Assembly (NCBI GenBank): GCA_973895155.1
Contig: OZ316898.1
Span: forward strand, 12,365,659-12,429,658
Origin: Marsupella aquatica
Taxonomy: Eukaryota; Plantae; Marchantiophyta
DNA length: 64,000 bases
Direction: 5' to 3'
The notes below the pieces were generated by a model that was not told the origin of the DNA, searched no databases, and saw nothing but the letters and a program-made list of their open reading frames with translations. Below, in pieces: positions 5,501-57,214 of the stretch; the first letter of the stretch is position 1; the number at the start of each line of letters is the position of its first letter. A program made the position numbers and the translations under genes.

Positions 5501-5710
5501 CCACACGACCACCATGACTAGGGAGGGTAAGAGTCCACTGTGGAAAAAGCATCAGTAAAGATCAGTAGGAGACCTCCATAGGATGCGCCAAGATAAGCTG
5601 CATGAGTTGTAACAAGGAGGACCGAACTATAGAGCGCAGCGCCAGAGAAATGTGGTTATAAAGGCGAAGTCTAATGTACCCTGGATGGTAGGCTGGAAGG
5701 GGGGGGGGGG
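2545..5710 (-). mobile_element. 5'-truncated RLE-type non-LTR retrotransposon (CRE-like clade)
   Basis: RT ORF followed by a CCHC finger and a restriction-like endonuclease, then a T-rich 3' UTR. The 5' end lies at a poly-C run (G run 5699-5710 on +). Boundaries approximate. Confidence 0.85.
2808..5552 (-). CDS. Reverse transcriptase + CCHC zinc knuckle + RLE (PD-D/ExK) endonuclease of a CRE-like LINE, 914 aa; probably N-terminally truncated
   Basis: Motifs RPIAIGE, VDVSNAFNTVSR, GTRQGDPLGGP, LSDD (YxDD position), GGFGL, CTCG...HLLQC, HDAVRD, RVDL...ADVVV...KEAKY...FLPLAVELFG. The frame continues upstream of the ATG through a TGA near 5562. Confidence 0.9.
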   Translation of the reverse strand: MLFPQWTLTLPSHGGRVGHRETASRIHRFLRGDWEQLQEEYFLRARSFTARALSDPARHSHPPEHRRLRRSCCLAQAGEYRRAVQALSPTTPAPPGEVTSLALQDLHPQPHDQLPLFVEDFEPEEDLQFSRDHFTYAFLHAPRCSAGGPSGYVFEHFHDLFPPEDPQFGFPVFFSFCQCIAAGRLPPPVSRLLSASHLLAMAKSSPGVRPIAIGEVFLCLVSRTLSSQFRSALSDHLSPHQFAVGVPGGCETVIAGIRATLDLHPDWVVLQVDVSNAFNTVSRAAIFCALRAADPDIQSLIPFVRCFYGLEAPLFYSHHSSTGVYTTLSSAEGTRQGDPLGGPLFAIAHFTALREVAMAHPQCIFPSLSDDTHIIGPPAVVTSALATLSTHLMGLGLRVQPVKSRAWSPAGLPSDLVLPPGFLRPADGLRVLGSPVGTASFCSSFIADSIQAALAHTPMLPKLADSQAAFGMLLRCIHPRASYLARTHPPTEDLCLHLRAFDVSIRQTLASLLGPGTLLSSPWLHRQLSLPISQGGFGLTSIESLAPLAFLGAWAAAFSLLADRFLIEDRPFLLSSLMEVEEGSLPFQVHLRAARSSLPDPVRAALPSFQEFLSLDPVRLQADLAGRMHTFTLSSILSEAPDTDRAWILSSGGKGAGGWLKANPVIPHLRMSSTEFSTAMRLRLGLPHPLLAGLPPSCTCGKPCDAIGVHLLQCSLGGETIIVHDAVRDATAQVLSGSLVCVRREVVLELPGPPSQRLRVDLTMVREGQRTLADVVVANPLRQDIIGTAATTVGAAASRAATMKEAKYAARASSDSFLPLAVELFGRLPPQFDGLLWQAARDVHGRMGPTGPPLSILTTHFCQCISVTLQRAQARAIYRRSLTVGASVPPQRLAPLEDVPIPLADLVLTLDVDH

Positions 5711-8142: not shown

Positions 8143-9603
8143 ATGCTGCAGGCGAGAGTGGCGGTCCCCATGGGCTCCTCCCCATGGAGCGAGCAAAGTG
8201 GTCAGCAATCTGAGCAGAGAGAGCTGAGGACGGTCGCATTGACCTTTCCTGCTGACCACTTTGATCGTGATCAGCAGAAGCAGACCATCATCGGAGCCCC
8301 CGGGACCAAGGCTTCATGTGAGAATTTGGACGAGCAGCTGTGGCAAACACTGCCCGAAGATGTACTGCCGAAGATCTTCGCAAGGCTTCCTTTTCGCTCC
8401 CTTTTCAAGATCCGCCTTCTTTCCAAAGCATGGGTGGCGTATATGGAGTCCCCTGCTTTTCAATTGGAAGCAACGTCCCAAGTCTTGTCCACTTGGGAAT
8501 CCTTTTCCCCGCTCTTCTGCGCCAGCTGTGAGCAGGATATGAGAATGGTCGCTTACTCCAGTACCTCTCGGCGATTGGAGAGGTTGTTCTCGTTGTCCTA
8601 TCTTTTCGAGGAAGGTCGATCCTCTTCCTTTCGCTGGCAACTGCGGAGCATCGCTGGAGCTCTACTGTGCCTGAAACAAGTTGGACAGCCAGGGGAACGA
8701 GGATTACTGGTGACCAATCCAGTGCTTAAATCGTGGAGAATACTCCCGCCACACGGATGGATGACCCCGTTTCTACCGGCCTACGAGATCATTCATCTAA
8801 TTAATTCGGAAGCGGAGGAGGATGCATCAGCTTACAAGGTCATCTCTATTTCTCAAGACAGTGGCATTCGAGACCCACACAAGAAAATTCCTTCACAGGT
8901 ACTTCCTCAAGATTTACTGTTCCCGCTGGCTCATCTACGTGCAGAGATCTATGACTCCGCCACAGGAGCTTGGACAGTGGACGAGAGTGGCCCAGTCATG
9001 CCTATGGACCTGCACAACGTGAGCAGCGTCTACGTAGATGGAGTCGTGTACTTTTCGCTGGCGAGCAGCAGATATGAGTCGTTCCACTTGTTGGCTTACA
9101 ATGTGATGAGCGGACGTTGGACCGCAATTCCTTGTCCTCCTGAGTCCTCCTCCAGCCTGGTGCAGTTGACGAGGTGCGGCTGCAGTGTGATGCTGGTACT
9201 CTCTGCTCCTGCTGCTCCTGATCGCAAATCCAAATTCGGCCCGTCAACTGATGACTTGAAGGTTTCTGAGGGCAGCATCAAAGTCTACGAGATTGGTCCA
9301 GACCTTCAGATCACTCTGGTATCTGGAGGCCCCACTGAAAGCATCCAGGGAGTGAAGATAGTGGAAGGTGTCTCCGGAGATGAAGACTCCATTTACTTCC
9401 AAGCTTTCGGACGGCCCCTTGTAGTCGTGTTCAATGTGAAACAGAAACTGTGGAGAACTATGGCTGTCCGGCTGGATTCCAGCAATGTCACGGATGATGA
9501 TTCGGGGAAACTTCTGAAAATGTCTTCTCGTTATATTGGGCACTGTTTCAATTGGACGAATTCTACCTTCCAGCCTGGTTCGAGTTCCTTCGGGGCCCCT
9601 TAG
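8143..9603 (+). CDS. Intronless F-box protein with a C-terminal kelch/FBA-like beta-propeller, 486 aa
   Basis: F-box motif LWQTLPEDVLPKIFARLPFRSLFKIRLLSKAW. Typical associated motifs GALLCL, LLVTNPVLKSWRILPP, AEIYDSATGAW, VYVDGVVYF, LAYNVMSGRW. Confidence 0.92.
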   Translation: MLQARVAVPMGSSPWSEQSGQQSEQRELRTVALTFPADHFDRDQQKQTIIGAPGTKASCENLDEQLWQTLPEDVLPKIFARLPFRSLFKIRLLSKAWVAYMESPAFQLEATSQVLSTWESFSPLFCASCEQDMRMVAYSSTSRRLERLFSLSYLFEEGRSSSFRWQLRSIAGALLCLKQVGQPGERGLLVTNPVLKSWRILPPHGWMTPFLPAYEIIHLINSEAEEDASAYKVISISQDSGIRDPHKKIPSQVLPQDLLFPLAHLRAEIYDSATGAWTVDESGPVMPMDLHNVSSVYVDGVVYFSLASSRYESFHLLAYNVMSGRWTAIPCPPESSSSLVQLTRCGCSVMLVLSAPAAPDRKSKFGPSTDDLKVSEGSIKVYEIGPDLQITLVSGGPTESIQGVKIVEGVSGDEDSIYFQAFGRPLVVVFNVKQKLWRTMAVRLDSSNVTDDDSGKLLKMSSRYIGHCFNWTNSTFQPGSSSFGAP

Positions 9604-20525: not shown

Positions 20526-21435
20526 GTTAAAACCATAATTTTGTAAAGTAAACCACAAAGGGAAGTTAGTACACCAGATGTGCACATTGTTGAAATTGTT
20601 TTCTCTCATTCTCATGAGAGAAAAGAGAATTCACTAAGGAGTGATTCAAAATGAAAGATTAAACATTTATGAGGGGAGCCAAATTCATTCAAAATACTCT
20701 AACTTCATAAAAGTTCACTGAAATTTAAAGGGGTCCAGAAATTAATTCAAAATAAAATTAATACAAATGGTTCACCTTGTTAAGGGCATATTAAAATCAA
20801 AATACTGGACACAAAATCTGAAAGCTGGATTCAACATTATAGCAGCTTCATAATATCCTCCAATGATGGGACTCGGATTATAGAGTTGTTGCTCGGGGGT
20901 CTCACTTCGCGAAAATCTCATATCACGTGCGACTAAGTATAGGGTCCGTTAATTGGGTTTCTCGGAAGACTTAAGAAGATTTGTGTAAGAACAATAGGGT
21001 CAATTTTATATGTTGGACAACTTGTAAGAATAATAGGGATATTAATATTTTTGACTATGTAGATGGAAGACATACAAGGAAGTTAGGGGGTCTTTGTGTC
21101 GGACTATGTAAATTACACGTGTCACTATATCATTGGTACACATGGCACACATAACATTCTCAATATATTTTCCTAAGTCATGTTTATTTTAACATGGATT
21201 CTAATTTGAGAATGATTTAAGTGGGTCTGGTTTTTTGGGGACTCACGTTTAGGGTTTGAGTGGGATTAAGTTTGAAATTGTTCCGTTTAACATGTCTAGT
21301 TTCCCTCAATTGGCCGCCCTTGTTAGTCTCCTCCCGTGTCATTTCCCTCCAATATCCCTTTGGCCCCACCCGCTGTTTGGGATGAGAGACTCTTTTGTTT
21401 GTACCTTGCAGCAAATGGTGTAAACGGGGGTCTAA

Positions 21436-22340
21436 ACGAGTGTGCTGCTGCTTGGAGCAAAGAAGGATTGAGAGAGAGTGTTGTGACCTCGGATGCGAGT
21501 GAAGAAGGATCAAGCGAGAGTGTTGTGCTCTCGGCTGTGAGTGAAGAAGGATCGAGCGAGAGTGTTGTGGTCTCGCCTGCGCTGCTGCTACGGCTGCTTG
21601 GAGTGAAGGATCAAGCAACATTTATTGGCTGCACTGCTGCTTAGAGCGAAGGATCGAGCGAGAGTTGTTGGCTGCGCCTTGGAGTGAAGAGGAGAGCGAG
21701 AGTGTTGCGCTCTCGGCTGCGTTGCTGCTGTTGCTGCTTGAAGTGAAGGATCAACCCAGAGTTCTCGACTGCGCGCTGCTACTTGGGAGTGAAGGATCAA
21801 GGTCGTTCTTGGCTACGCTGCTGCTTAGAGTGAAGGGGAGAGCGAGACTTCTCAGCTGCACTGCTGCTTAGAGTGAAGGGGAGAGCGAGACTTCTCAGCT
21901 GCGCTGCTGCTTAGAGTAAAGGGGAGAGCGAGACTTCTCGGTTGCACTGCTGCTTGGAGTGAACCCGGGAATGAAGGATTAGGCGAGAGTGTTGCGCTGC
22001 AAGGTTGGAGTGTATAGGTGCGCTATTGTCTTGGTTGAGGGAGTGTGCTACGTTCCTGTTGCTGAAATGATAGGAAAGTTTATGTGACTGCTGTGTTGTT
22101 GCTCAAACAGGGAGTGCGGGCGGGAGTGTGGCTGTTGCAAGTGCTGTGTTGCAGCTGCTCAAACAAGAGGTGGGTGCCGGGAGTGTGGCGTTGCTGCTTG
22201 TTGAAACGGAAGCTGCTACCTTGCTGAAACGGGAGCTACTAGCTTGCTGAAACGGGAGCGAGAGTGTTGCATTGTTGCTTGCTCAAACAGGATTGCGAGG
22301 GCTACTGCCAGCATTGCTGTGTTGCTCAACCAGGAGGTGG
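21436..22340. repeat. Internal tandem array: 43-bp unit CTGCTGCTTAGAGTGAAGGGGAGAGCGAGACTTCTCAGCTGCA plus degenerate copies, then GTTGCTCAAACAGG-type repeats
   Basis: Near-perfect units start at 21818, 21861 and 21904; about a dozen looser copies flank them. Confidence 0.85.
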
Positions 22341-24542
22341 GCGCTTCCTGCTTTGACGATCGTGCTTGCTTGCTTGCTATTGTTTGACGCTCAATCATGC
22401 TTGCTTGCTACTGTTTGAAGCCCATATGTACCACGCATGGCACACCTTATCTGGTAGCGGTCGTAGCCGATGTGTTCCATAGACATTGCTTGCGCAAGTC
22501 ATATGCATTAGATTTGCCCATCGAGATTTGAAAGTAGTTAGACCGGGGAATTGTGTTTCATGTGAACTCATGAGTAGTTCTAGCATTTCTGTTTCACATG
22601 CACTGAAGGCCTTTCTTGTACTCTGTCACATCATGTCGATAGTTCAAAAGTTGCTTTCATTTCCAAGGATGCCTGGTAAAAAAACTACCTTTTACCTTCG
22701 TTCCTACGTTAAGATGCGTAGAAACTCTACTGTGCGACTTATGATTTGTAGGAGACGAATAAATCAGCTCTCTAGATACGGTGATCGGTGCCCTCTCGTT
22801 GTGTCCTGTCCTAGCATAGCTGTGTCCATTCGCTGCATACGGGTCGCGATCGTCATGGTTGTTGCTTCAGGATTTAGTTGAGCATTTGGAAGCTGTCTCT
22901 GTCTGTTCCCATGTTCTGATTCAATTATAATGACTAAAGTTTTTGCCGTTTCTCTTTGCAGCGCTTTACGAACAGGCTCTGAAGCACGAGAAGAGTTTGT
23001 ACATCACCTGGACAGGGGCTCTTGCCACGCTTTCCGGGGCGAAAACTGGCCGATCTCCGAAGGACAAACGTGTTGTCAAGGAAGACACTTCCAAGAATGA
23101 TTTGTGGTGGGGCAAGTAAGTGTAAATCCTCTATTTCCGTGAGTTGATTGCAAAAAAGGGATCCACACTTGAATATGTTGTAGCCCATTGATGCGCTCAT
23201 CTCTGTAGTGTCTTTGATGTAGTAAATTCTCTATTTGGTGGTCTGGTTCTTCTACCTCCTCATCTTCCTCCGCCTTTGCCTCTTCGCGCTCCTCGTCGTC
23301 ATTGGCGCTGCCTTGGTTACGGCCAACCGATCTCCACATCCTGTCACTCTCCCATCTCTTGCTACTTCTGCCCTGCACCAATCAAAATTTGCCACCAATC
23401 CCTCCACACGAACACAAACTCTTCACAGCAGCCTTCCCCAAAACCACAAACCTCATTGAATTCTCCCCAGATGACAAAACATACGCAGATGCTGCGACTG
23501 ATGAGCATCTGCTATTCCCAAAATTCCACTATTCCGTTACTGACTGGCTCCTGGAATTTGGACCAGCAACAAATTCAGCACACACGAAATCCTTTGCTGT
23601 CGAGAGGACACTCCAAACCTAACTCGCTTTTTATCGACTGCCTTACACGGCCTTTCCTACTTTTCTGCTCCTCTCCTCGCCTCTCCACACCTCTCTCTTC
23701 TCTGTGTCAACCTTATGATGCACCCCGACCACAAAATCCTTCACCAGCACACTTTTACTTCTTCTACAAGCCAACGACTTCTCCCACGCAACGCGTTTCC
23801 ACAATGCAGCAATTGAGGCTCTTGAGTCTGGAGTTCCCCCTTGTTCCTTCATTCCTTTCGTGGATTTTGCTGCGCAAACAGAAGCTTTGGCAGTGAAGAA
23901 CATATACCCAATTTTGCCACGTTTGCCTTTGAGCATGGATTTTGCTTTTGCACTGAATCTATGATTATCATGGCTCCCACGTCACTCACTCCCTCATCAG
24001 AGCACAAGTTTCAAAAACCTCAGATGCTTCATTCGTCTACTGATGAGTAAACATGTGTTACCAACAAATAGCATTTGCAGAGGAGTAATTGCTGTAGCTA
24101 TGACCCAGCCCAAGCTTCCTCCAATGGTCAGCCAGATTGGATGCTCTTCTATGGAACACAATCATAGTGAAACACTGCATAAATTAGACCAATGTGTAAT
24201 GTAGGAAGGACACCATAGCTATGAGAGGTCCATGATCCTATTCAGGTTAGCTATTCAGGTTAGCTATTCAGGTCTGTTGAGCCCAATTATTTGTTTATTG
24301 CTGTCGTAACATGCATCATGGCCAATTGGTTGTCTTCAGTGCTTGCAGCATTTGAAACTTATTGAACTGGTGGTTTTAATTTTGTTCACAGGTTGCAAAA
24401 GCAATCAGTGCTTGTAGCTGTGAGCACCAGCACTTGCGGTGAAGCAGTTTGCTAGAGCACATACTGTACCTAGTGAATTGTAAGTTGCCTGTCATTGCAC
24501 GTCTGATCGCCTGGCCATTCACCGAGTAAAAAAAATAGTGCC

Positions 24543-24941
24543 ATGGCTAAATTGGGCATTACATTAGAAGCGAATTATGAGAAGCTCCTTTTGCAGCATC
24601 CAGATGAATGCTGCTGGTGCGAATCTTGTGTGAAGTGCAGGGTTGGTGATGGCAATTTTGAATGGTTCCATTGCTTCTGCTTGAAAATGCGTGGAAGACT
24701 TGTTACTAGGACATACATGGGAAAGCATGGCAAAGTTGTCACACGTCGCTGGAGGTGCTCTTGTATAAGGCCAACCATTTGGCCTCAAAATGAGTGTCTT
24801 TTACGCAAGATTGTCATCCCGGACACGCTTGACATTGTAGTCCTAGATAGTATTCCACATATAACTGAGCTTGATATTGTAGCCCCAGATAGTATTCCAG
24901 GTCAAGCTAAGGTTACAGCCCATGGATGCTTGACATTGTAG
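24543..24941 (+). CDS. Small Cys/His-rich transposon cargo protein, 132 aa, function unknown
   Basis: ATG in good context (GCCATGG); CCWCESCVKC...HCFC...CSC; repeated LDIVVLDS/LDIVAPDS; splice-like sites upstream (acceptor ~24391). Confidence 0.5.
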   Translation: MAKLGITLEANYEKLLLQHPDECCWCESCVKCRVGDGNFEWFHCFCLKMRGRLVTRTYMGKHGKVVTRRWRCSCIRPTIWPQNECLLRKIVIPDTLDIVVLDSIPHITELDIVAPDSIPGQAKVTAHGCLTL

Positions 24942-25283
24942 TCCCTGATAGTACATGGATGCGTTGTTCATGACTTGAGGTCCGGGATGACTAGGCCTTT
25001 GTTTGCAAGGCTGCAATTGTACCATCCATGATATATGAGAATAATTTTCATTCCCATTATGTGGCAAAGTTTCGCAAGCTGGCATTGTATTTATGTATGT
25101 CTTGGTTGGTGGGTGTCCAGGCTGCACTGTGTAGTTGACTTCATCTGGGAGGGAGGTTTGCAGATCATTGGAGCAGGTTTGTAACTACTTCAAATGTGGA
25201 TTTCTCCAAGTTCTATGGATTGCCCAGTATCATACATGTCCCTCTCATATGTGATGTGCTTTGTGATGATTTCAGTTGTAACC

Positions 25284-25943
25284 ATGCCGACAAGGACTTC
25301 AAACATAAAGAAAGCAACACAGTCCTCTTTAGAAGAGGTATTGTGTATTCCCTTGTTCTCTGAGCAAGAGATTCTACAAACCAGCCCTCATGTTTGTGCA
25401 ATTTGTGAGCATGGTGGGAAGTTGGTAATTTGTGATGGGCCATGTCACAGGCAATTTCATTATGTGGTTGGAGATGAAGCCCCTAATGACTCTTGCCCCT
25501 GTGTAGTCCTTCCCCTCCATCATGGAGGGAAGCCATGGTTTTGCCCAAATTGTAACCAGGACCAGGCCATGTGTTATGGGTGCCGCACTGTGGGACCGTC
25601 ACCTACAATTGTGCGAAAATGCTCTGATCATTTTTGTGTACGATTTTATTGCTTTGGGTGTTTGGTAGCTGCTGCAAAGTCCTGCCCACTGCATACATGT
25701 GTGACATGTTATCAGAGTCTTGAGGGTCAGATGGTCAAGAACATGGTACAATGTTTACGATGTCCAAATGCCTGGCATACAGATTGTCTCCAAATGATCA
25801 AAAGCAAAGGGTTTGCTCATGATAGGGACATCTGGGAACATGAAGCACATGGACAACAGCGACAGATGTTTTATTGCCCCTGTCATCCTATTGATCCACA
25901 CCTGAAGACTCCAATCAGGGACCACATTTCATGGCTCCAGTGA
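25284..25943 (+). CDS. Stand-alone EDM2-like composite PHD-finger protein, ~219 aa (ORF open from 25194)
   Basis: CAICEHGGKLVICDGPCHRQFH...WFCPNC, CYGC...C...C.RFY, CPLHTCVTC...CLRCPNAWHTDCL, and C-terminal YCPCHPIDPHLKTPIRDH. This matches the recalled EDM2 PHD cassette end (YC.EHEID..L.TPVRDH). ACCATG start just after a TTTCAG acceptor at 25275. Confidence 0.85.
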   Translation: MPTRTSNIKKATQSSLEEVLCIPLFSEQEILQTSPHVCAICEHGGKLVICDGPCHRQFHYVVGDEAPNDSCPCVVLPLHHGGKPWFCPNCNQDQAMCYGCRTVGPSPTIVRKCSDHFCVRFYCFGCLVAAAKSCPLHTCVTCYQSLEGQMVKNMVQCLRCPNAWHTDCLQMIKSKGFAHDRDIWEHEAHGQQRQMFYCPCHPIDPHLKTPIRDHISWLQ

Positions 25944-26442
25944 TCTGAATAATGAACAAACCTATTACTTAGGTTTCAACGTCTTAGTGGGGTATGAGCA
26001 AGGCATATACTTAAGCTGCATCATGGGTGGTAGTACCCAATTTTATTAGTGTTGACATTTTGTCATAATTACGGTCACTAATAGTGCTGCATTTTGATGA
26101 GCAAAAGCACTAAACCTCGGGAATTGTTAGAAAACTAGGCAAAAAGGATATTTTTTCTAAAGATATTTTATCCAACTTTAACGGTATATCATGATTTTCA
26201 CTGAATACATTTGCATGTATGATGGATTGCATTATAAAGTGTTTTGGCCTATTAGCACTTCTATTGTTAAATGTATGCTGACATTATGTACATTACTGAC
26301 ATGAGAATGTGTATGTTGTCATTGCATCTCTTGAAGATCCTAATGTGTTTCCCTTGTGTGTATTTCAAATGTATTTGTGCAGGTCTTTCTGTTATCGACT
26401 CCAAAAGCAATGGTGCTATGCATGTTCTAGATTTGTATTGCA

Positions 26443-29400
26443 ATGGCAGCCCCTAAACCCAACTCTGTTAAATTAATATGCAAAGTTGGGGATGACAAGG
26501 CTGATTTACCAATCTGTGTTTTGTCATTCAAAGAAGGACACACCCTACATGATTTTAGGGCTCGTATTGCCTCTACTCTAGACTTTGACTTCGATTTTTG
26601 GGATGAGAGACTTCCTGGTCGAGTGAAACTTGTACATGAGAAATTAATTGATCTGTCTGAGCTGGATGGAAGAGTTATTGTTGTACAACAAGAACTTGGA
26701 GATGGTGGGAGGATCCCACCAGTACCCTGTCATCCTTGCACTCCTGCATCATTGGGTCCAAATATTGAGACACCACAACTGAGGCCAACAGCACTAGCAC
26801 CCTCCCCTGTAAGGGCTTCTTTTGAGTCACAATTGATGAGAGATGTCCCATCAAAGCTATGGAAAGATGAGTGGATGAGGTTAGAGAAATGGGTACATAA
26901 GAAGGGTTATGGTGATCACAATTGGAGAATTCGTACCTGGGATGAGGGGACAGATGTTCGAGGGCATCTGGAGTGTCTTGAATGTAGGGAAACTTATGGC
27001 AATGCAGACAACTCTCAGAACCCTAAATCCATCTCCAATTGCTTTAGTAATTTTAAGACCAAACACTTGGTCTTCAATAAGCACAAGGATAACTATTGTC
27101 GGAGAAGGGGCATTCCTTCTACTTTGGTTCAGGTAGCAGACATCTCTGAGAAGCCAGAATATGATCATGCAGACGCCATCAAAGTAGGTGTTGAGATAGT
27201 TCAGCGATTGAATGCTGAGCTTGGGGATGATGGCAAACTATTCTCTATTGTTCCTGATCCCAGTACTCCTGAGTATGTAAACAGGTCTTTCCTGTTTAAG
27301 GTTCGCTGTACTGTCTGTGGAATGCTTCACACTGACTTGTGCCCCAAGAAGCTTACCTTGGAGCCCAATTTGAGGACACACTTAGTGAGTCGAGATCACT
27401 TGGATGCATTGGAGACTAGGCATGACACAAAAATGCTTGCCTTGAGGTCTGGGAAGAGGGGCAGGCCAAAGAGGACTGATTCTAGGGACCTACATCCTGG
27501 TCAGAGCGGGATTTTGAAGTTCTTTAAAGATGATGGGTCCCGGACAGGCAGCAGTTCAGGTTCAGGTTCAGGTGTGTGTGAATTTGTTGATCTTGGTCTG
27601 AGTTTGCTTTGCTGGGGATTATGGGTAGAGAGAGGTGTGCCTCGACTGTTATGGAAGGGTATATCTTATGATATTTCTGGCATTTTAGATGATCAGTCTG
27701 GGGGAATTACATGGCATTGTGAGCCAAGTTGTTGCTTGGATGTTTTCCATCCAAGTAGAGAGAGTGTTGTGAGTATAGCAGGCTGTTTTAGACACAAGGA
27801 TTGCTTGAGGTTATCACAGAATGGAGGAGGATTTGAAAATCTAACTTGTAGTGAATGTGATTCTATAACACTAGAAGATGATTTTCGTGGACGGGTGCAC
27901 AGGGAAGCGGAAGCAGTAGTCCACAGAGGGAGCCGAACCACTGCTGGTGGTATACGTTTGGATTATTTGACCAACACAGAGTTAAGAGATCAAGTGCACA
28001 ACCTGAACTCTGTGCGACGAAAAGAGCGTTGGTTGTTAGCTTTACAGGCTCAGAAAGTATGTGCCTTGAGCACCAGGAAACGAAAACTAGAGGAGTTGTT
28101 AGGAGTTGCAGCAGACAGGAAGGATTTGAGATTGTTTCTTAGGAGTATTTTGAATGGACACAGGAATGGTGCATTTGGTGGTAAGGAGGGTTTGTGGGAT
28201 TTCTTGAAGGATGTAGCTCACAATTTAGGCAGGAAGCCAAAAGGTAATCGTTACAGTAATAGGACTCGAGCTATTGCTCAGGCTATGTTCCAATTTGGGG
28301 GCCGTCAAGTTGCTCATTGTTTTGCACGAAACTTGACAGCCCCTAGCCTTGTGACCCTAAAACGTGATAGAGCAAAACTCACACCTTTTCGAACCGGGTT
28401 ACGGAAGGAAACCTTTCAGGAGATTGCTAGAGTGTTGTCTGCTGCAAAGCACTCATTGGGCATTGAGGGGGATGTGCCTGTTATCTTTGCTGAGGATGAA
28501 ACAAGGATCAAAGAACGCCCTAGGTAATTGGAACTGGACATTTTTCCAATTGTTTTTTTAATGACTTTACAAGTAGCACTTGGCTGGAATTGCTGTGATA
28601 TTGAAAAATTGCATGTCTGTGTTTCAGGTGGGAGGCAAAGTATGATACTCTCATTGGTTTCTGTGGACCTTCAGAGCAGCATGTATGCTCCTATGGTTTG
28701 GAAATTCTAGTTGGTGAAGGTGATGAGGGGTATGATAAAATTGTAAGTACATTTGAACAATGCCCCAAGTGCATGTATGCCCGAGTTGTGATTGTGAATC
28801 CTCTGCATGAGTCCTTACCTAAATTGGCTGTGTGTGCACTTCCAACTTGTAATAAGTTCACAGCTTCTTGGGTACGAGAGCATTGGGTCCAGTTAAAGGC
28901 TTTTTGGGATGAATATTGTAGAGCTATGGTAGGCCCTTTGCTTGGACATGCTAGTGATGGTGATGCACGTCGCCGAAAGCTGATGCTGGAAGATTACAGA
29001 GGGCAGAATGGATCATACCCAAGGTACGGAGTTGGGTGGGAAGGGTGGACATACTCTGTTTCAATTCTACCAAATGGAGATTTGTATGGCTTTGGTGACC
29101 AAGACCAACCTCATAATGGGAAAAAGATGATAAACCCCTTAGACAGAGTGTCTTCTTTACTGGTGCTAGGAGATCAACATGCATCTTTATCTTATGTAGC
29201 TAATGTCTACAATCATTATCCAATTCATGAACATGGCATGGCTTGGGCTCGGGGGTTTCACTTCCACAAAAATGGCACATCACGTGCGACGAAGTATAGG
29301 GTTGATTTATTGGTTTGAAGGGAAGACTTAAGAATTTTTGTAGAAGAACAATAGGGTCCTTTAAATTCAATTTTGAGACTTATAAGAACATTAGGGTCTT

Positions 29401-31333
29401 TTTAACCAAAATTTTGGAATATTCCAAGAATATTCAGAATATTCCAACTTTATAGGGGTTGAAAAATTAAAAAAAATTCTTATATTTTAGGGGGTCTGAG
29501 GCCTAAAAACGTCGCAGGGGATGGGGAGACATCCATATAGTGAGACCCCTGAGGGCTTGGGATGATGTGAATAGGACTGACCGGCAGAATTGGGCAGGTC
29601 CACAACGAATAGCAGCAAGAAGAGTGCAGCAATGTCTGAAAGATATGTATGAGAGGAGAGATGTACAACATGAACGAAGTTTAGGAACTCAGTTGTACTT
29701 GGAGATTTGTGCAGATTACTTAGATATTTTCTTTTCTCCAGTTCATGATTTGAGGTCCCGTATTGTGTTAGCATCCAAGGTTTCATTCTTTCTACGTTTG
29801 TGGAGATTGTGGTTGAGGTTTGGTGACCATTCAGTGGGTGGGAACTTTGCAGCACACACTGAGAAAGACATGATGTCTATTCAGGCTTTTCATGATGTTA
29901 ACATGTCATGTCATTTCATTGTGCTGTTAATTTGTGCCTTTCGAGATAAGTTCCCACATCTAGGTGTTCCCTTCCACTTGCTAGGTTCAGATTGTTGTGA
30001 GATTTTCTTCAGCAAGGTAGGAGGCATGAGTGGCCATGAGCGGAATTATGATTTTGGCTCTCTGTTGGATAGTGCTGTTGGACTGAACCGGCTTGCTGCC
30101 CTAGAATATGGACCAGAAGGCTTGAAGATAGGTCGTTCACATAAGAAACAAGATCATGTATGGGGGAAGATTCATCCTATAGGGGAAGGGGAGGAAGCAC
30201 CAAATCTACTTGACTATTCTCTCATTGAGACTAATGAATTAGTGGTTGCAGCCCTTAAAGAAGGTTTTGTTGCTGCTAAGGATCTTATGCATCAATTGCA
30301 GATGTCTCCACGAAGTTCCTTACCAGCAGCTAGAAAGAGATGGTGGACATGTCCTTGGGTTGTGGAAAGTGAGACCTGGCCACTAGAGGTGGTTCTGAAG
30401 GAAGCAATTGTTTGCAATGATTCTGAGGAGCAAGTAGAGCACCAACCACCAGACATAGGTCCTCGCCCAACTGGAGATTTTCATGAATTGGAAGATCCTG
30501 AGGATGATCTGAATAGAATAGATGCATGGTTAACAGAACCAGATCCCATTGTTGTTCCTGAGATGCATTCAGATGATGTACACAGAGATGATATACAGTT
30601 TGATGTAGACCCCTCAGATGAGCTTGAGACATTAGGTCATGAAGTTCGGCATGTGTTTGGATCAGTTGTCCATGCTGTAACTAATGTACAGAATCGTACC
30701 AAGGTAGTGCCTACTGTTACTTATGAAGGCAAGGTGATTTACAAATCCACTCTGGTAAGCCAGTTGGTAGGAAATCCGCATTTGTCAAAAGATAGGCTGA
30801 CAAGGGTGAAACAAGTGCTATACTATAGTACTGGCAAGAGAAAAGTGCAAGAAGTCAATCCTAACTCATGTTTTGTTGATGTTGGCACTGATTGTGCAAT
30901 TGCATTTGAGTCTGATGATAGTCCTGCTCCAAGTACTAGATCTGGAAAAAGAAAGGGAGGAAAGAATAAGGTTGTGGTGGAGGCAATCTCAGCAGGTAAG
31001 AAATATTTTTGGTTGGGTCGGATTGTCCAAATGAGACAGAAGTATGGCAGTAGGTGGGGCAATTGTCGGTCACCAATTGATTTGATGGATAGGCCAAATC
31101 CACTTGCAGGGCAATCAGGTAACATTTGTGAACTGTTGTTAAATTGGTATAGTCCTATTGGTAAGAGCAAAAGTGAATTCAGATATGATACCACTGATTT
31201 GAAATGGATGGATATTGAAATGGTCATTGCTAGTGTTAGTTTAACCATGAAAGAAGGGGTTATGGATCGTATCTATGTGTTGGATCCAATAGATAGACGT
31301 GCTTTGGATCAGTATCTTCAAACAATGGTATGA
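26443..31333 (+). CDS. P-element-like DDE transposase, ~1490 aa after splicing and MITE removal; currently interrupted by a MITE
   Basis: Exon 26443-28523, GT-AG intron 28524-28627, exon 28628-29247, then 29562-31333. Motifs APSLVTL, FAEDETRIK...WEAKYDTLIGFC, GHASDGD, DQPHNGKK (DxxH), DRQN, SDCCEIFFS. No other stops or frameshifts. Confidence 0.85.
29248..29553 (+). mobile_element. 306-bp MITE of the same family, nested in the transposase gene
   Basis: Ends CTCGGGGGTTTCAC...GTGAGACCCCTGAG; 8-bp TSD GGCTTGGG (29240-47, 29554-61). Both subterminal regions are homologous to the ends of 20892-31939. Confidence 0.93.
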
Positions 31334-31419
31334 ATATCATGTTACTGTTTAGTTTTTGAGAGTCTGTATATATGTTTTATTTTGTTAATATTAGTGGGTG
31401 TAGTGGGATAGGATAGGGG

Positions 31420-31479
31420 GTGACGGATTGGCAACTTGAGATCCTTTCTCAATTAGGGGTTCAATTCCCCTCCGTCACA
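31420..31479 (+). ncRNA. Compact tRNA-like (mascRNA/t-element-like) structure
   Basis: 7-bp acceptor stem GTGACGG/CCGTCAC; reduced D loop ATTGGCAAC; 6-bp stem TTGAGA/TCTCAA with a 5-nt loop; T arm AGGGG-TTCAATT-CCCCT; discriminator A. Confidence 0.6.
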
Positions 31480-31556
31480 TGTTACATCCCTCAACATAAG
31501 TTTTAAATGGAGTATGGATGGAGCATGGGATTGGTGATCAATGGGTGGAATGGATT

Positions 31557-31639
31557 ATTTATGTTGTGACCTTAAAGGCCATCCCACTTATGCACGTAAG
31601 GTTTATATTGGGATGACCTTTTAGGTACACAATATAAAT
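31557..31639. other. Imperfect ~30-bp hairpin in the transposon 3' region
   Basis: ATTTATGTTGTGACCTTAAAGGCCATCCCA pairs with TGGGATGACCTTTTAGGTACACAATATAAAT (one G:U, one bulge, two mismatches). Confidence 0.7.
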
Positions 31640-33147
31640 GATGCATTGAAATGATCAAAGTTTAAGGTTGACAAAGGTGCAAGAACTGTTGCAGGGCGTG
31701 CAATGTCTGACATACGACTTCACAAGGTACTGACATAGACTTATCTTTTCTTTCTAGGCATTTTATATTGATATGTGACACTTTACTTCACAAATTATAG
31801 GGGCAATACAATTTGGATTTTAGACTCTTAGAAGAAAGAAAGAGGGAGGAAAAAAAAATTCAACTTAATAAGTATGGGGGTCTAGGCATGAAAACGTCGC
31901 AGGTGATGGGGGGGTCCTCCATATAGTGAGACCCCCGAGAGTTGTTGTCACTTCATTCATGAATTTGCACCTTTTGTGCTGAATATCAATAGTTACAGTT
32001 TGGGGTTCAACTCCAACAGAATGCCCAACTAATTATGTTAAAGTGATGTTCTGTTCAAGTTCTTATAAGGAGAAAAAAATTCCAATTTTTGAACAAAGCG
32101 CAATGGCATTGTGGTTAGGGGAAGACCTACAGCAATGCAAGAGGGGAAGTGTATATTTTAAGATTTTCTCTTTTTGGCGAGAGAGGGAAGTGTTACCCAA
32201 TGTGGAGGAAAAGATGCTAAGAATATTAAGTATCTAGCTTTCTTTGATAAATTTCTGACCTTTACATCTCCCTAGATTTAAGAATACTTATTGTCAAATA
32301 CTGGTAAATGGGGTCTGCGGCTAGCTGGGAAATTGGCTTATCAAAGACCTTGCCACTTTGGACAAAAGTGTCCATTCAATTATACTTTTAGTTGGGTGGA
32401 ATTGTGCAAATTTTTGCACGTCTAAAAATTTTCTGGAGAGGAGTTTTCCATGAAGTTTGATTTTCTCAGAATTTAAAGAGTTCAAGGTTCAAAGAAAATG
32501 ATGCTCCCATCGACCAAGTGAATCATGCAACTCCGAGTGACACTCTTCTTGTTCTCAAATGAACAGTTTTCAGGAGCAAACTTTGACCTTCAACACCTCC
32601 TGTGATGTTCAGTGGGGTTGGTTCATCTTGGGCTATTTAGATGTGTCTTGGAAATATAGTTCCACCTTATTTAATACCTCTAGTTTTCATGAAGAATTGA
32701 GAGAGTTATGAATTTCTAGCATTACTCCAATCACTCAATGAATGTACACACTTTGCACTTCTGAAATTTTTGAGTAGCTAACTTTGACATTCAGTATCCC
32801 CTAAAAATACAATGAATCTATTTTTTCTGGGTTAGTTAGTAACTGCTTTGAATAATCTTTCCATTGAGCCTTATGTAGTAGTATTTCATTCAGAATGTAG
32901 AGACCTACACATTCTCAAAGATGACCATTTTGCTTTCTTGCCAGGTACAGTTTATCTGTGTAATATCTACTACATGAGAAACTAGGGTCTTGTTGCCGTC
33001 TATCTGGGTTGCAAATGTACTTCTGAGCATGTTGGCAAAGATGGAGGTCTTTCCAGGCTTCAATCTGGGTTTTAGATTTCTGATGAATAACCCTTTTTAC
33101 TTACATGAAAACTTGGGAAATAGAATGAGAAAATCTCCGTTTACATT

Positions 33148-34105
33148 CCTCATCTGCGAATGTCTTCTGTGGAGTTCTCGACAACCATGCGTCTTTGTAT
33201 GGGGCTGCCCCACCCACTTCTTGCTGGTTTACCTCCTTCTTGTACTTGTGGGAAGCCTTGTGATGCCACAGGTGTCCATCTTCTTTGGTGCAGTTTGGGA
33301 GGTGAAACCATTTTTGTTCATGACGCTGTGAGATATGCGACTGCTCAGGTTCTCTCTAGCTCTTTGGTTAGCGTGCGTCGTGAGGTGGTGCTCGAGTTAC
33401 CTGGTCCCCCATCACAGCGGTTACGGGTGGATCTTACCATGGTCCGTGAGGGTCAACGTACTTTGGCAGATGTCGTGATGGCAAACCCATTGGCCAAGAC
33501 ATCATTGGGACAGCGGCAAACAACGGCATGGGCAGCAGCATCACGAGCGGCAACAACGAAGGAGGCCAAATATGCTGCACAAGCTTCATCTGATAGTTTC
33601 CTCCCCCTTGCTGTTGAGATATTTGGGCATCTTCATCATCAGTTTGACGGGCTTCTTCGACAAGTTGCTCGGGATATTCATGGCCGGATGGGTCCCTCTG
33701 GACCCCCGCTATCTGTTTTAACCATGCACTTTCGCCAACGCATTTCAGTTACCTTACAGCGTGCTCAAGCTCGGGCCATCTATCGTCGCTCTTTGACAGT
33801 GGGTGCTAGTGTGCCTCCGCAACGGCTAGCCCCCCTAGAGGACATTCCAGTCCCACTTGCCGATTTAGTTTTGACATTGGATGTGGACCATTAGCTTTTC
33901 GCCACATTTGCTAGGAATGATGAGGACCTCGGTCCATTTGCGGTATTTTGTTTTTAGTTCCTCTTTCTTGGTTTTAGAGATTTTCTTTTGCTCACTTGGT
34001 TTGAGTTTGGTTTTATCCACTTGGGACCTCTTGGGGCCTTTTCTGGTTATTCTTTTGTACTCTGTTTGGCCCTTTTTCTGTAAAAAGTTTGTTTTCTCAA
34101 AAAAA
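33148..34105 (+). mobile_element. Second, strongly 5'-truncated copy of the CRE-like LINE (CCHC + RLE region, ORF 33160-33894)
   Basis: The protein is highly similar to the C-terminus of 2808-5552 and ends in the same LADLVLTLDVDH*. A7 tail; 9-bp TSD GTTTACATT (33139-47, 34106-14). Confidence 0.93.
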
Positions 34106-55950: not shown

Positions 55951-56883
55951 CGGACAAGTGACAAAGACATTTTTAATTTTTTCCATGGCTATGGAAAGCT
56001 AGTCTTGTCATAGCTTCTTCTGCTGCACAAAGGGTTACATTCCGACACTGGCAAAAATGGAAAATCCTTAAAGATTATGCTGATGTGGATGGCCGTATCC
56101 AAAACACACGGTCAAACAATGACAAAACACCCAGAAAAGCTGCCCAAAAAACACCTCCGCCACTCATCTTGCCAAATGGATCAATAGCACATTGCAAATA
56201 GTAGATGTTATTGTAAATGATTTTTCTATAGACCATCAGCCTGAACGCTACAGATAGTGGATGCTCTGGGCTTTCTAATAAGAGTCTTGGATGCAGCGTT
56301 TGCCTGAGCTTCCTACAATCCCATGTTTGACAATAGAGTCTACTGTATGTGCAGGCCCAGGAAGACACCCCAAGCATGTACTTTTCCAGTCTCATAAGTG
56401 CAGGGTATCAGTCATGCACTTCTCCACAGGTGCATGCTGTACTATCCAATAGGTGCATACAAAACTGCTTATGGTCTTCTGCAGAGGAGTTGTCAATTCA
56501 TACTTGTTGGACTCCTCATACATACGCCAAACAGTCATATTGCATAATCCAAGTGCATGAAACTAGTGTATATAGTTGAAAGGGATGCTCGGATGGACTG
56601 AGGGCATGAACCTCAAGTCTTCCATGGACTTTACACACCCAAAGTAAACCCAAAGTAAACTAGTGACAAAAGTGATGTGACAGTATCATTTGATTGGATA
56701 TTGCTAATGACTTCCTCAATGAAGCAATTTAAAACCATCACCCAGAAATCTCACCAGAAATTGTCAAGCTGATATGCCGGGGGGGAAGCTACTGTAGTAT
56801 TGTGGAACTTCCCCAGTTTGGGCCTCTTCTCAAAACTGGGCCCAAAACTCCAAAACAAATATGGACTGACTACCGGCTCTAAT

Positions 56884-57214
56884 AGGGGGTCTCAAATATA
56901 GGCCCGGGACATTTTAGCGGCCGACCGAGTTAGGTTTGGGCGGACGCGGCACACCCTTAGCCTAGCCCACACACACCTCCCGTGGCGATTTACCGTTGCC
57001 CGGGATGGATACTTCGAAACCGTCGACTGGCCGTAATTTTGAACTAAAGCTGCATCTCGTGACTTTCTTCTCCAACAGGAACTCACACTTTACGGGCCTA
57101 AAAAACTTGGGTCACAAAAGAAAGGTGGTGCCGGTAAACTTGCCCACGACACTCATAACGGACGCGTCTGACCTCCCGGGAAGTAATGTTCTGGGCCGAT
57201 ATTTGAGACCCCCT
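56884..57214. mobile_element. ~330-bp MITE with ~30-bp TIRs
   Basis: AGGGGGTCTCAAATATAGGCCCGGGACATT versus the reverse complement of AATGTTCTGGGCCGATATTTGAGACCCCCT. TSD is AAT or TA depending on the boundary chosen. Confidence 0.85.

What the first reader, a model, noticed from the sequence alone, without database searches (positions are those of the whole stretch)
25284..25943. Transposon-encoded minimal EDM2-like PHD cassette: candidate anti-silencing or targeting factor
Seen: an intact, intronless ORF inside the TIRs, made almost entirely of consecutive PHD-like fingers and ending YCPCHPIDPHLKTPIRDH. Established: EDM2 reads H3K9me2-containing marks through its composite PHD and, in the ASI1-AIPP1/EDM3-EDM2 complex, promotes full-length transcripts across heterochromatic TE-containing regions. 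TE-encoded anti-silencers are known (VANC proteins of VANDAL MULEs). Inference: the element captured only the reader module, without the methyltransferase-like C-terminus. It could act as a decoy, protect the element's own transcripts, or steer insertion to particular chromatin.
Basis: partly seen in the sequence, partly recalled or inferred. Interest (0 to 1): 0.92.

Follow-up and report, generated by a model that had tools for sequence, protein, structure and literature searches.

The report
Transposon-borne EDM2-type PHD reader gene
A small intact gene made only of three zinc-finger "histone-reading" modules sits inside an 11-kb P-element-like jumping gene of a liverwort-type genome, and because unrelated CACTA transposons carry the same gene family, transposons here appear to keep, and probably exchange, a chromatin reader of their own.

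Summary
Window 25284-25943 (+) is an intact, intronless 219-codon ORF. It aligns end to end with the composite PHD cassette of Arabidopsis EDM2 (aa 224-432, 31% identity, E 5e-27) and keeps all 24 zinc ligands.

It lies inside an 11,048-bp element (20892-31939) with perfect 15-bp TIRs and an 8-bp target duplication. The transposase family has the fold of the P-element GTP-binding insertion domain (Z 12.1). A 306-bp MITE of the same family interrupts the transposase.

This element did not copy the gene from EDM2. The gene belongs to one strongly supported clade (100/100) of short, liverwort transposon-borne PHD genes. The other members I could place sit upstream of CACTA-type transposases. The nearest host proteins are liverwort 620-770-aa proteins (Mp1g03210 type), not EDM2 orthologues.

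Selection is supported by ligand conservation, saturated dS against dN about 0.5, and indels among copies confined to non-coding DNA. Expression and histone binding remain untested.

This scan has already reported the CACTA-borne version several times on other DNA of this genome. New here is the P-like carrier, so two unrelated superfamilies share one reader gene. That favours a host-directed chromatin function over a transposase-specific one.

The parts
20884..20891 (.). Left copy of the 8-bp target-site duplication AGTTGTTG
   Evidence: identical 8-mer directly outside both TIRs
20892..20906 (+). Left terminal inverted repeat CTCGGGGGTCTCACT
   Evidence: I25, 15 nt, 100% complementary
21450..21990 (.). 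Subterminal arrays of 42-43-bp tandem repeats in the element's 5' non-coding part
   Evidence: families D1-D8
22943..23119 (+). Captured fragment of a host PEP carboxykinase gene (58 codons)
   Evidence: Pfam PEPCK_ATP, E 2.8e-13, profile positions 10-61
25284..25943 (+). The finding: intronless 219-codon gene for a stand-alone triple-PHD protein (stop codon included)
25395..25553 (+). PHD module 1 (Cys38 to Cys90; ligands C38 C41 C50 C54 H59 C71 C87 C90)
   Evidence: Pfam PHD-1st_NSD
25572..25694 (+). PHD module 2 (Cys97 to His137). Cys123 replaces the His found in host proteins, a change shared by all transposon-borne copies
25698..25886 (+). Variant PHD module 3 (Cys139 to His201)
   Evidence: Pfam PHDvar_NSD E 1.1e-7
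25887..25940 (+). C-terminal tail PIDPHLKTPIRDHISWLQ, shared with EDM2 (TPVRDHVKF) and Mp1g03210 (TPNRDHIRF)
26443..28523 (+). Transposase exon 1 (N-terminal half, no Pfam domain, ends just after the AEDET motif)
28524..28627 (+). GT..AG intron of the transposase gene, at the same place in the related element L004
   Evidence: reading across it gives the family consensus R-W-E...GFCG
28628..29247 (+). Transposase exon 2, part before the MITE (holds the HASDGD motif)
29248..29553 (+). 306-bp MITE of the same family inserted in the transposase, with 8-bp duplication GGCTTGGG (29240-29247 and 29554-29561)
   Evidence: empty-site joint 29239>29554 in runs X1 and X5
29555..31333 (+). Transposase exon 2, part after the MITE (SDCCE..FFSKVGG motif and a C-terminal beta-barrel domain)
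31925..31939 (-). Right terminal inverted repeat
31940..31947 (.). Right copy of the target-site duplication AGTTGTTG

Best explanation
Window 25284-25943 is a real accessory gene of DNA transposons, kept by selection. It encodes a protein of about 25 kDa made only of an EDM2/NSD-type composite PHD cassette (PHD1, PHD2, variant PHD3, conserved tail), which is a histone H3-tail reader fold.

Here the gene is cargo of an 11-kb P-superfamily element (15-bp TIRs, 8-bp TSD, 1,490-codon two-exon transposase). It sits 500 bp upstream of the transposase on the same strand. The only visible lesion in the transposase is a MITE insertion.

The gene was not copied from EDM2 by this element. It belongs to one clade of liverwort transposon-borne PHD genes that is otherwise found at the head of CACTA elements, so two unrelated superfamilies share it. 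The direction of transfer is unresolved.

Inference: because it serves elements with unrelated transposases, the protein most likely acts on host chromatin and is not a partner of one particular transposase. It would occupy the marks or tails that the related host readers (Mp1g03210 type or EDM2 type) recognise. That would weaken or redirect host chromatin control of the element (anti-silencing or decoy), or mark permissive chromatin.

Shown: the gene, its fold class, its transposon context, its clade, and purifying selection. Inferred: histone binding and the pro-transposon effect.
For: Gene and homology:
- Intact ORF.
- BLASTP to EDM2 aa 224-432: E 5e-27. BLASTP to Marchantia Mp1g03210 aa 522-723: E 7e-30.
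- 254 library hits. The long ones are EDM2-like proteins with DNMT1-RFD plus the PHD cassette.

Fold:
- AF2 model: pLDDT 86.9, pTM 0.80.
- Best PDB matches are histone-H3-binding multi-PHD modules: JADE1/BRPF1 PZP (E 1e-4), and NSD1-3 PHD5-C5HCH (probability 0.99; Z 6.0, rmsd 2.8 over 86 aa).

Transposon context:
- TIRs and 8-bp TSD.
- The same TIR type and an 8-bp TSD occur in Riccia.
- Transposase-family model aligns to the P-element transposase GTP-binding insertion domain: Z 12.1, rmsd 2.9, 170 aa, against the next unrelated hit at Z 6.7. The invariant Glu falls at the position of P-element E531.
- Depth is similarly high over the PHD gene and the transposase in three runs.

Clade:
- Transposon-borne PHDs form one clade, 100/100.
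- They share a His-to-Cys change in PHD2 and a shortened linker.
- Relatives L001, L002 and L010 lie upstream of mutually homologous Transpos_assoc (CACTA) genes, with BRCT and F-box genes in L001.

Selection:
- All 24 zinc ligands are identical between the window copy and P0001, while other sites are 77% identical (P about 0.002).
- 21 of 24 ligand columns are invariant across 10 members, against 19 of 195 other columns.
- dN is 0.48-0.56 with saturated dS against the CACTA-borne genes. dN/dS is 0.08-0.20 for closer pairs.
- All 12 listed indels among copies fall in non-coding DNA or the intron.
Against: - No RNA run on record holds the stretch, so transcription is unshown.
- No DNA of the close relative P0001 could be fetched, so no dN/dS exists for this sub-lineage itself.
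- The context of P0001 is unknown.
- The middle Pfam model (PHD_NSD) does not hit, and PHD-1st_NSD is below its cut-off.
- Related P-like elements lack the gene: Riccia L012, and L004 within 1.2 kb upstream. It is therefore dispensable for transposition.
- At roughly 1-2% divergence, intactness of this one copy could be chance.
- Histone specificity, and any effect on silencing, are inference only.
- Depth from contigs is not a copy number.
Confidence: 0.6

Rival explanations
1. The protein is an integration-targeting or tethering subunit. It binds the element's own transposase and a histone mark, and so steers insertion to particular chromatin, as RAG2's PHD finger does for RAG1 or the chromodomain does for chromovirus integrases.
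For: - The gene lies 500 bp upstream of the transposase on the same strand.
- The same arrangement occurs in the Calypogeia fissa P-like element.
- The transposase has no recognisable THAP or other DNA-binding Pfam domain.
- The fold is that of H3-tail readers.
Against: - The same gene clade serves CACTA elements, whose transposases are unrelated. A specific transposase contact would have had to evolve twice.
- P-like relatives without the gene exist.
- No interaction test was run.
Confidence: 0.17
2. It is a neutral transduplicate: a host gene fragment picked up by the element (Pack-type capture), with no function, intact in this copy by chance.
For: - The element does carry a clearly non-functional captured host fragment, the PEPCK piece at 22943-23119.
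- Several relatives are decayed (L006, L007, L008, L011).
- This copy is young enough that 660 bp could stay open by chance.
Against: - Complete ORFs with the same start and stop persist at 45-82% protein identity across at least 10 lineages.
- Zinc ligands are almost perfectly conserved.
- dN is far below the saturated dS, and dN/dS is 0.08-0.20 in closer pairs.
- Indels among copies avoid the ORF.
Confidence: 0.1
3. One reading: this element (or its recent ancestor) copied the PHD part directly from the host EDM2 gene, leaving the methyltransferase-like C-terminus behind.
For: - The cassette is co-linear with EDM2 aa 224-432.
- The decayed cassette in the C. fissa P-like element has host-type features (FYH, long linker) and branches below the transposon clade. 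That could mark an original capture by P-like elements.
Against: - The window gene groups at 100/100 with CACTA-linked genes and shares their derived characters.
- The nearest host proteins are the liverwort Mp1g03210 type, not the EDM2 orthologue clade.
- The C. fissa branch is very long (4.56) and only weakly supported at 84/92.
Confidence: 0.1
4. It is a host gene (or a domesticated one) that merely lies between two unrelated repeats, and is not transposon cargo.
For: Short host-annotated PHD-cassette proteins exist in liverworts, for example M. polymorpha Mp4g03050, 280 aa.
Against: - It lies within perfect TIRs flanked by an 8-bp TSD.
- The stretch is held at very high and similar depth as the transposase in runs from three labelled organisms.
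- It falls in the transposon clade, not with host proteins.
Confidence: 0.03

Closest known systems
Arabidopsis EDM2 (ENHANCED DOWNY MILDEW 2) composite PHD module, and EDM2-like proteins of land plants
   Same: Same cassette: three modules in the same order and the same tail motif TPxRDH. It aligns over EDM2 aa 224-432 at 31% identity, E 5e-27.
   Different: - No DNMT1-RFD N-terminus and no methyltransferase-like C-terminus.
- It falls outside the EDM2 orthologue clade.
- PHD2 has Cys where EDM2 has His, and the PHD2-PHD3 linker is about 20 residues shorter.
- It is encoded by a transposon.
Liverwort host proteins of the Mp1g03210 type (Marchantia polymorpha and M. paleacea, Riccia sorocarpa, Calypogeia fissa; 620-770 aa)
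   Same: These are the best-scoring long relatives (E 1e-21 to 1e-17) and the host group nearest to the transposon clade in the tree. The cassette and tail are co-linear.
   Different: - The host proteins carry about 500 extra N-terminal residues.
- They keep His in PHD2 and the long linker.
- I found no paper on their function.
CACTA-borne stand-alone PHD genes of liverworts
   Same: Same clade (100/100), same gene boundaries and intronless structure, and the same derived Cys in PHD2. Protein identity is 45-49%.
   Different: Those genes sit at the head of elements whose transposase starts with the Transpos_assoc domain, often with BRCT and F-box genes. Here the carrier has an 8-bp TSD and a P-element-type transposase, and no BRCT or F-box gene.
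NSD1-3 PHD modules and PZP domains (JADE1, BRPF1, AF10)
   Same: - Pfam names the fingers after NSD.
- NSD2 PHD1-3 is the best PDB sequence hit, E 2.6e-6.
- The model matches NSD PHD5-C5HCH and PZP, which bind the H3 tail.
   Different: Much lower sequence similarity than to EDM2-like proteins (30 against 70-90 bits). There is no SET or other catalytic domain.
VANC anti-silencing proteins of VANDAL (Mutator) elements in Arabidopsis (from established knowledge, not tested here)
   Same: A transposon-encoded accessory protein, separate from the transposase, proposed or shown to counteract host epigenetic silencing.
   Different: No sequence or fold relationship. VANC binds DNA motifs of its own element, whereas this is a histone-reader fold derived from a host chromatin protein family.
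RAG2 / RAG2-like genes of ProtoRAG-type transposons, and chromodomains of chromovirus integrases (from established knowledge)
   Same: A mobile element uses a histone-mark reader (PHD or chromodomain) alongside its recombinase.
   Different: Those readers act as partners or domains of one particular recombinase. Here one reader gene is shared by two unrelated transposase superfamilies.
Drosophila P element / THAP9 superfamily (for the carrier element)
   Same: - 8-bp TSD and short TIRs.
- The transposase-family model matches the GTP-binding insertion domain of PDB 6p5a (Z 12.1).
- The catalytic Glu is in register.
   Different: - No THAP domain or Pfam P-element family is detected.
- The transposase is twice as long (1,490 aa).
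- The host is a land plant, and the element carries an accessory PHD gene.

Membership tests
EDM2/NSD-type composite PHD cassette | Three consecutive zinc-binding modules with complete Cys/His ligand sets | tested here: met
   24 ligand positions are present. 21 are invariant across 10 family members.
EDM2/NSD-type composite PHD cassette | Co-linear alignment over the whole cassette, including the C-terminal TPxRDH tail | tested here: met
   EDM2 aa 224-432, E 5e-27. Mp1g03210 aa 522-723, E 7e-30.
EDM2/NSD-type composite PHD cassette | Pfam models PHD-1st_NSD, PHD_NSD and PHDvar_NSD above their gathering scores | tested here: inconclusive
   PHDvar_NSD 32.2 bits (cut-off 27): met. PHD-1st_NSD 24.8 bits (cut-off 27): below. 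PHD_NSD: no hit. The middle finger has the His-to-Cys change and a short linker.
EDM2 orthologues (EDM2/ELP proteins) | Architecture of N-terminal DNMT1-RFD-like domain, PHD cassette, and long C-terminal methyltransferase-like region | tested here: not met
   The 219-aa protein is the cassette only. EDM2-named proteins have DNMT1-RFD plus the cassette in 1,240-1,400 aa.
EDM2 orthologues (EDM2/ELP proteins) | Placement inside the EDM2 clade in a cassette tree | tested here: not met
   It falls in a separate transposon-borne clade (100/100). The host proteins nearest to that clade are liverwort Mp1g03210-type proteins, and the angiosperm EDM2 clade lies farther away.
EDM2 orthologues (EDM2/ELP proteins) | Binding of H3K9me2-containing histone tails and partnership with ASI1/IBM2 and AIPP1/EDM3 | not testable with these tools
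   The only support is fold similarity to H3-tail readers.
Liverwort transposon-borne PHD gene clade | Monophyly with the short stand-alone PHD genes; shared Cys in PHD2, short linker, same start and stop | tested here: met
Liverwort transposon-borne PHD gene clade | Position at the head of a CACTA (Transpos_assoc / Transposase_21) element | tested here: not met
   The carrier has an 8-bp TSD and a P-type transposase, and the window holds no Transpos_assoc-like sequence.
P-element superfamily (carrier element) | 8-bp target-site duplication and terminal inverted repeats | tested here: met
   AGTTGTTG at the element ends and GGCTTGGG at the MITE. GATGTCTT in the Riccia relative.
P-element superfamily (carrier element) | RNase H-like catalytic domain interrupted by a GTP-binding insertion domain, followed by the catalytic Glu | tested here: met
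   The model of P0187 (62% identical to the window protein) aligns residues 137-327 to 6p5a_A 338-528: Z 12.1, rmsd 2.9. The invariant E330 corresponds to E531. The overall model is poor (pLDDT 54.6) and the D-D residues are assigned by motif only.
P-element superfamily (carrier element) | THAP DNA-binding domain and Pfam P-element transposase families | tested here: not met
   No Pfam hit at E up to 10 on any transposase piece. The PDB sequence and profile searches were blank.
VANC-type anti-silencing factors | Homology to VANC, and demonstrated loss of methylation at the element's own copies | not tested
   No VANC sequence was compared. The link is an analogy of role only.

The most novel reading that the evidence does not exclude
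A portable chromatin-reader gene, derived from the host EDM2-like PHD family, has moved between two unrelated DNA-transposon superfamilies (CACTA and P-like) in liverworts and is kept by selection in both. It would work as a general counter-defence or chromatin-access module (a reader-only decoy against host heterochromatin readers). That would make it the first transposon 'anti-silencing cassette' known to be exchanged among transposon superfamilies.
Probability: 0.3. Interest if true: 0.85.

Novelty: new variant of a known kind. Interest (0 to 1): 0.62.

Why it matters
Transposons that carry their own tools against host silencing are known from very few cases, VANC being the main one. Here the tool would be a copy of the host's own histone-reading module.

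That distribution is a natural experiment. It says the protein is useful to a transposon whatever its transposition chemistry, which points to an interaction with host chromatin.

The idea is directly testable in Marchantia, where transformation, CUT&RUN and methylome tools exist. The finding also adds accessory cargo to a P-element-type family in land plants, a superfamily I did not find listed for liverworts in the papers searched. If the protein proves inert, the case still documents long-lived, selected gene capture by DNA transposons in bryophytes.

Tried and rejected
- RNA support: the look-up of sequencing runs returned no holder on record as RNA. The four runs laid were contigs of unknown kind and showed no splice joint, so expression stays open.
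- DNA of the 82% relative P0001, and of P0003, could not be fetched because the sample files are too large. No dN/dS for this sub-lineage was therefore possible.
- The metagenome scan gave only three short, decayed CACTA-type copies.
- Pfam and the PDB sequence and profile searches on the transposase pieces were blank. Only the fold comparison classified it.
- I first read the stop at 28525-28527 and the frame change before 28698 as a nonsense mutation plus a frameshift. I rejected that reading: it is a GT..AG intron (28524-28627), also present in L004.
- Nesting of the window gene inside CACTA-borne lineages is favoured by the tree (92/89) but not significant (AU p 0.163). I do not claim a direction of transfer.
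- The 132-codon ORF at 24543-24941 and other upstream ORFs had no Pfam hit and no relatives in the fetched loci.
The pieces were searched separately.
- Literature searches for a transposon-encoded EDM2-type PHD, for liverwort CACTA plus PHD, for Mp1g03210, and for P elements in liverworts found nothing relevant.
Full report
**1. What is there**

Window 25194-25943 (+) is an open frame of 249 codons. I take 25284 as the start, because the homologues begin at the aligned position with the same kind of short basic N-terminus.

The protein is almost entirely zinc finger. There are three modules: Cys38-Cys90, Cys97-His137 and Cys139-His201. An 18-residue tail follows.

- Pfam finds PHDvar_NSD (E 1.1e-7, above its cut-off) and PHD-1st_NSD (E 2.4e-5, just below).
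- The best solved-structure sequence hit is the PHD1-3 region of NSD2 (E 2.6e-6).

**2. Is it EDM2-like or just PHD-like?**

A full HMMER search of 1.84 billion representatives gave 254 hits at E 1e-3 or better. After a handful of short proteins, the hits are long plant proteins matched at residues of about 220-440.

- The nine long hits I scanned include 1,240-1,400-aa proteins that carry DNMT1-RFD plus the NSD-type PHD cassette.
- They include Arabidopsis EDM2 itself and proteins named EDM2-like in Mangifera, Aristolochia and Neltuma.
- Pairwise BLASTP aligns the window protein end to end with EDM2 aa 224-432 (31% identity, E 5e-27). The match includes the tail (window TPIRDHISW, EDM2 TPVRDHVKF).
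- Scores to EDM2-like proteins are 70-90 bits, against 30 bits for NSD2.

The refutation criterion 'no closer to EDM2 than to generic PHDs' is therefore not met. An AlphaFold model built on 29 sequences is confident (pLDDT 86.9, pTM 0.80). Its best PDB matches are histone-H3-tail-binding multi-PHD modules:

- PZP domains of JADE1 and BRPF1 (Foldseek E about 1e-4).
- The NSD1-3 PHD5-C5HCH tandem (probability 0.99; VIA Z 6.0, rmsd 2.8 Å over 86 residues).

The Z values are modest and show fold class only.

**3. The carrier element**

The ORF lies in an 11,048-bp element (20892-31939).

- It has perfect 15-bp inverted ends, CTCGGGGGTCTCACT, flanked by the direct 8-bp duplication AGTTGTTG.
- Within three mismatches the end motif occurs only four times in the window: the two element ends and the two ends of a 306-bp MITE.
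- The MITE (29248-29553) has its own 8-bp duplication, GGCTTGGG, and sits in the transposase gene.
- Contigs of two public runs join 29239 directly to 29554. Copies without the MITE therefore exist.

The transposase gene has two exons, 26443-28523 and 28628-31333. They are separated by a GT..AG intron that is present at the same place in a related element (L004). Without the MITE and one duplication copy the coding sequence is 4,473 nt, or 1,490 codons. I did not send a joined model to any tool.

Classifying the transposase:

- It has no Pfam hit and no PDB sequence hit.
- Its relatives are all from liverworts (Riccia, Calypogeia, and unnamed contigs).
- A model of the 62%-identical relative P0187 is poor overall (pLDDT 54.6).
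- Its confident part, residues 137-327, superposes on residues 338-528 of the Drosophila P-element transposase. These residues lie between the second catalytic Asp and the catalytic Glu, which from my own knowledge of that enzyme (not checked here) is its GTP-binding insertion domain. The fit is Z 12.1, rmsd 2.9 Å, 170 residues, and the next unrelated entry has Z 6.7.
- The family's invariant Glu (SDCCE..FF) falls three residues after the aligned block, where P-element E531 lies (E531 also taken from my own knowledge).

Together with the 8-bp duplication, which also occurs in a Riccia relative with the same type of end (GATGTCTT), this places the carrier in the P superfamily. It is not a CACTA element, which makes 3-bp duplications.

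**4. The gene is not confined to this copy**

The word-index search found a 213-aa protein 82% identical (P0001) and five proteins 45-48% identical. All are about 215-225 aa, apart from one 304-aa gene call with an extended start, and all have the same start and stop.

In three of the four public runs laid, the whole stretch 24400-30300 is covered at very high depth. Depth over the PHD gene and over the transposase is similar (for example 366-762 against 454-782 in run X2). Contig depth is not a copy number, but this is what a multi-copy element that includes the PHD gene would give.

**5. Where the gene comes from**

I fetched the contigs of the 45-49% relatives.

- In L002 and L003 the next gene downstream starts with the Transposase-associated domain (Pfam E 2.1e-5; 27 of 30 Atlas neighbours carry it, some with Transposase_21).
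- In L010 the same gene type follows.
- In L001 the PHD gene is followed by a BRCT gene, an F-box-like gene and then the same transposase start.
- In L009 the next gene resembles the L001 BRCT gene.
- These downstream genes are homologous to one another. None resembles anything in the window.

The relatives are therefore CACTA cargo, which independently agrees with several earlier findings of this scan on other pieces of this genome.

Trees:

- In a careful ML tree of 40 cassettes, all transposon-borne proteins form one clade (100/100). The window protein plus P0001 (100/99) lie inside it.
- The clade shares derived characters: Cys instead of His at the fifth ligand of PHD2, a PHD2-PHD3 linker about 10-20 residues shorter, and the same gene boundaries.
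- The host proteins nearest to this clade are liverwort proteins of 620-770 aa with the cassette at the C-terminus (Marchantia polymorpha Mp1g03210, M. paleacea, Riccia sorocarpa, Calypogeia fissa). True EDM2-type long proteins lie farther away.
- The tree nests the window lineage among CACTA-linked ones (92/89). An AU test does not reject the alternative that the CACTA-linked genes form their own clade (p 0.163).

Evidence from other P-like elements:

- A Calypogeia fissa P-like element (transposase 56-75% identical, identical right TIR) carries a decayed PHD cassette at L011 8349-9021. It lies directly upstream of its transposase, on the same strand.
- That cassette has host-type characters (His in PHD2, long linker). 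It branches, on a very long branch, below the whole transposon clade (84/92).
- A Riccia element of the family (L012) has no PHD gene. L004 has none within 1.2 kb upstream of its transposase.

I conclude that one transposon-borne gene lineage is shared by two superfamilies. Which one had it first is open.

**6. Selection**

- Between the window copy and P0001, all 24 zinc ligands are identical while the other sites are 77% identical (P about 0.002 if sites were equivalent).
- Across ten members, 21 of 24 ligand columns are invariant, against 19 of 195 other columns.
- Against the four CACTA-borne genes with DNA, dN is 0.48-0.56 and synonymous sites are saturated. For closer CACTA-type pairs dN/dS is 0.08-0.20.
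- Among copies in the public runs, all 12 listed indels fall upstream of the ATG, between the genes or in the intron. None falls in the PHD ORF or the transposase exons. Six further indels were not shown.
- Decayed copies also exist (L006-L008, L011), as expected for a transposon gene.

What is missing is a codon-level test within the P-like sub-lineage. No DNA of P0001 was available.

**7. How it most likely works**

Shown:
- A small, foldable reader-type protein.
- Encoded by transposons.
- Conserved under selection.
- Shared by two transposase superfamilies.
- Dispensable for some family members.

Inferred: it binds histone H3 tails. Because it serves unrelated transposases, it probably acts on host chromatin and is not a subunit of one enzyme. 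My preferred model is a reader-only competitor or decoy of the related host readers, which blunts or redirects chromatin-based control of the element. Tethering of transposition complexes to particular chromatin is the main rival. EDM2's own biology (reading heterochromatic marks and promoting full-length transcripts through heterochromatin) is established knowledge for Arabidopsis and only an analogy here.

**8. Novelty and verdict**

I found no paper describing a transposon-encoded EDM2-type PHD protein, liverwort CACTA elements with PHD cargo, Mp1g03210, or P-type elements in liverworts.

Within this scan the CACTA-borne version has been reported repeatedly (s1-327412, s1-324818, s1-751208 and others), so the gene family itself is not a first sighting. 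New here:

- The P-like carrier.
- The second P-like case in Calypogeia.
- The argument these give about function.

I rate it a new variant of a known kind (selected host-gene capture and accessory proteins of DNA transposons), interest 0.62.

**9. Limits**

- There is no expression evidence and no binding evidence.
- The transposase fold rests on a low-confidence model of a relative.
- The long Calypogeia branch makes its placement unsure.
- The organism was not identified beyond 'liverwort-type'. All close relatives of both genes come from liverworts.

Noticed in passing
window 22943-23119 (+): A 58-codon fragment of a PEP carboxykinase gene (Pfam PEPCK_ATP, E 2.8e-13) lies inside the element between the left TIR and the PHD gene. 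The element has therefore also picked up an evidently non-functional host fragment.
   Followed up: partly
window about 31000-31330 (C-terminus of the transposase); model of P0187 residues 617-767: The C-terminal domain of the P-like transposase family is a beta-barrel. Its best structural matches are BAH and chromo-barrel histone readers (DIM2, DNMT1 BAH1 with H4K20me3, AIPP3 BAH with H3K27me3, Eaf3), at Z about 6-6.7. This is too weak to claim, but the transposase may carry a chromatin-reader-like domain of its own.
   Followed up: partly
L011 8349-9021 (Calypogeia fissa, GCA_965154635.1): A P-like element of another liverwort carries a decayed PHD cassette of host type (His in PHD2, long linker) directly upstream of its transposase. 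This is either an older state of the cargo or an independent capture at the same position.
   Followed up: partly
L012 8695-17872 (Riccia sorocarpa): A complete 9.2-kb member of the same P-like family, with TIR CTCGGGGATGTCACT and 8-bp TSD GATGTCTT. It has no PHD gene, and it has unexplained ORFs (369 and 187 aa, no Pfam domain) downstream of the transposase.
   Followed up: partly
window 21450-21990: Arrays of 42-43-bp tandem repeats lie in the 5' subterminal region of the element. They are possible transposase-binding sites.
   Followed up: no
window 56883-57215: A 333-bp unit is bounded by 31-bp inverted repeats that begin TAGGGGGTCTCA. The core GGGGGTCTCA is shared with the P-like TIR, so this may be a MITE of a related family (I9).
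   Followed up: no
window 2705-3558 and 33144-33997: Two inverted, 85-92% identical pieces of a LINE-type retrotransposon (914-aa ORF at 2808-5552 with RVT_1) bracket the region. The 244-aa ORF at 33160-33894 belongs to the second piece.
   Followed up: partly
window 8143-9603 (+): An intact 486-aa F-box protein gene (F-box plus At3g26010-like beta-propeller), apparently an ordinary plant host gene.
   Followed up: no
window 25255-25283: A pyrimidine-rich stretch ending in TTTCAG lies 10 nt before the PHD start codon and looks like a splice acceptor. The gene may have an upstream non-coding exon. This cannot be tested without RNA.
   Followed up: no
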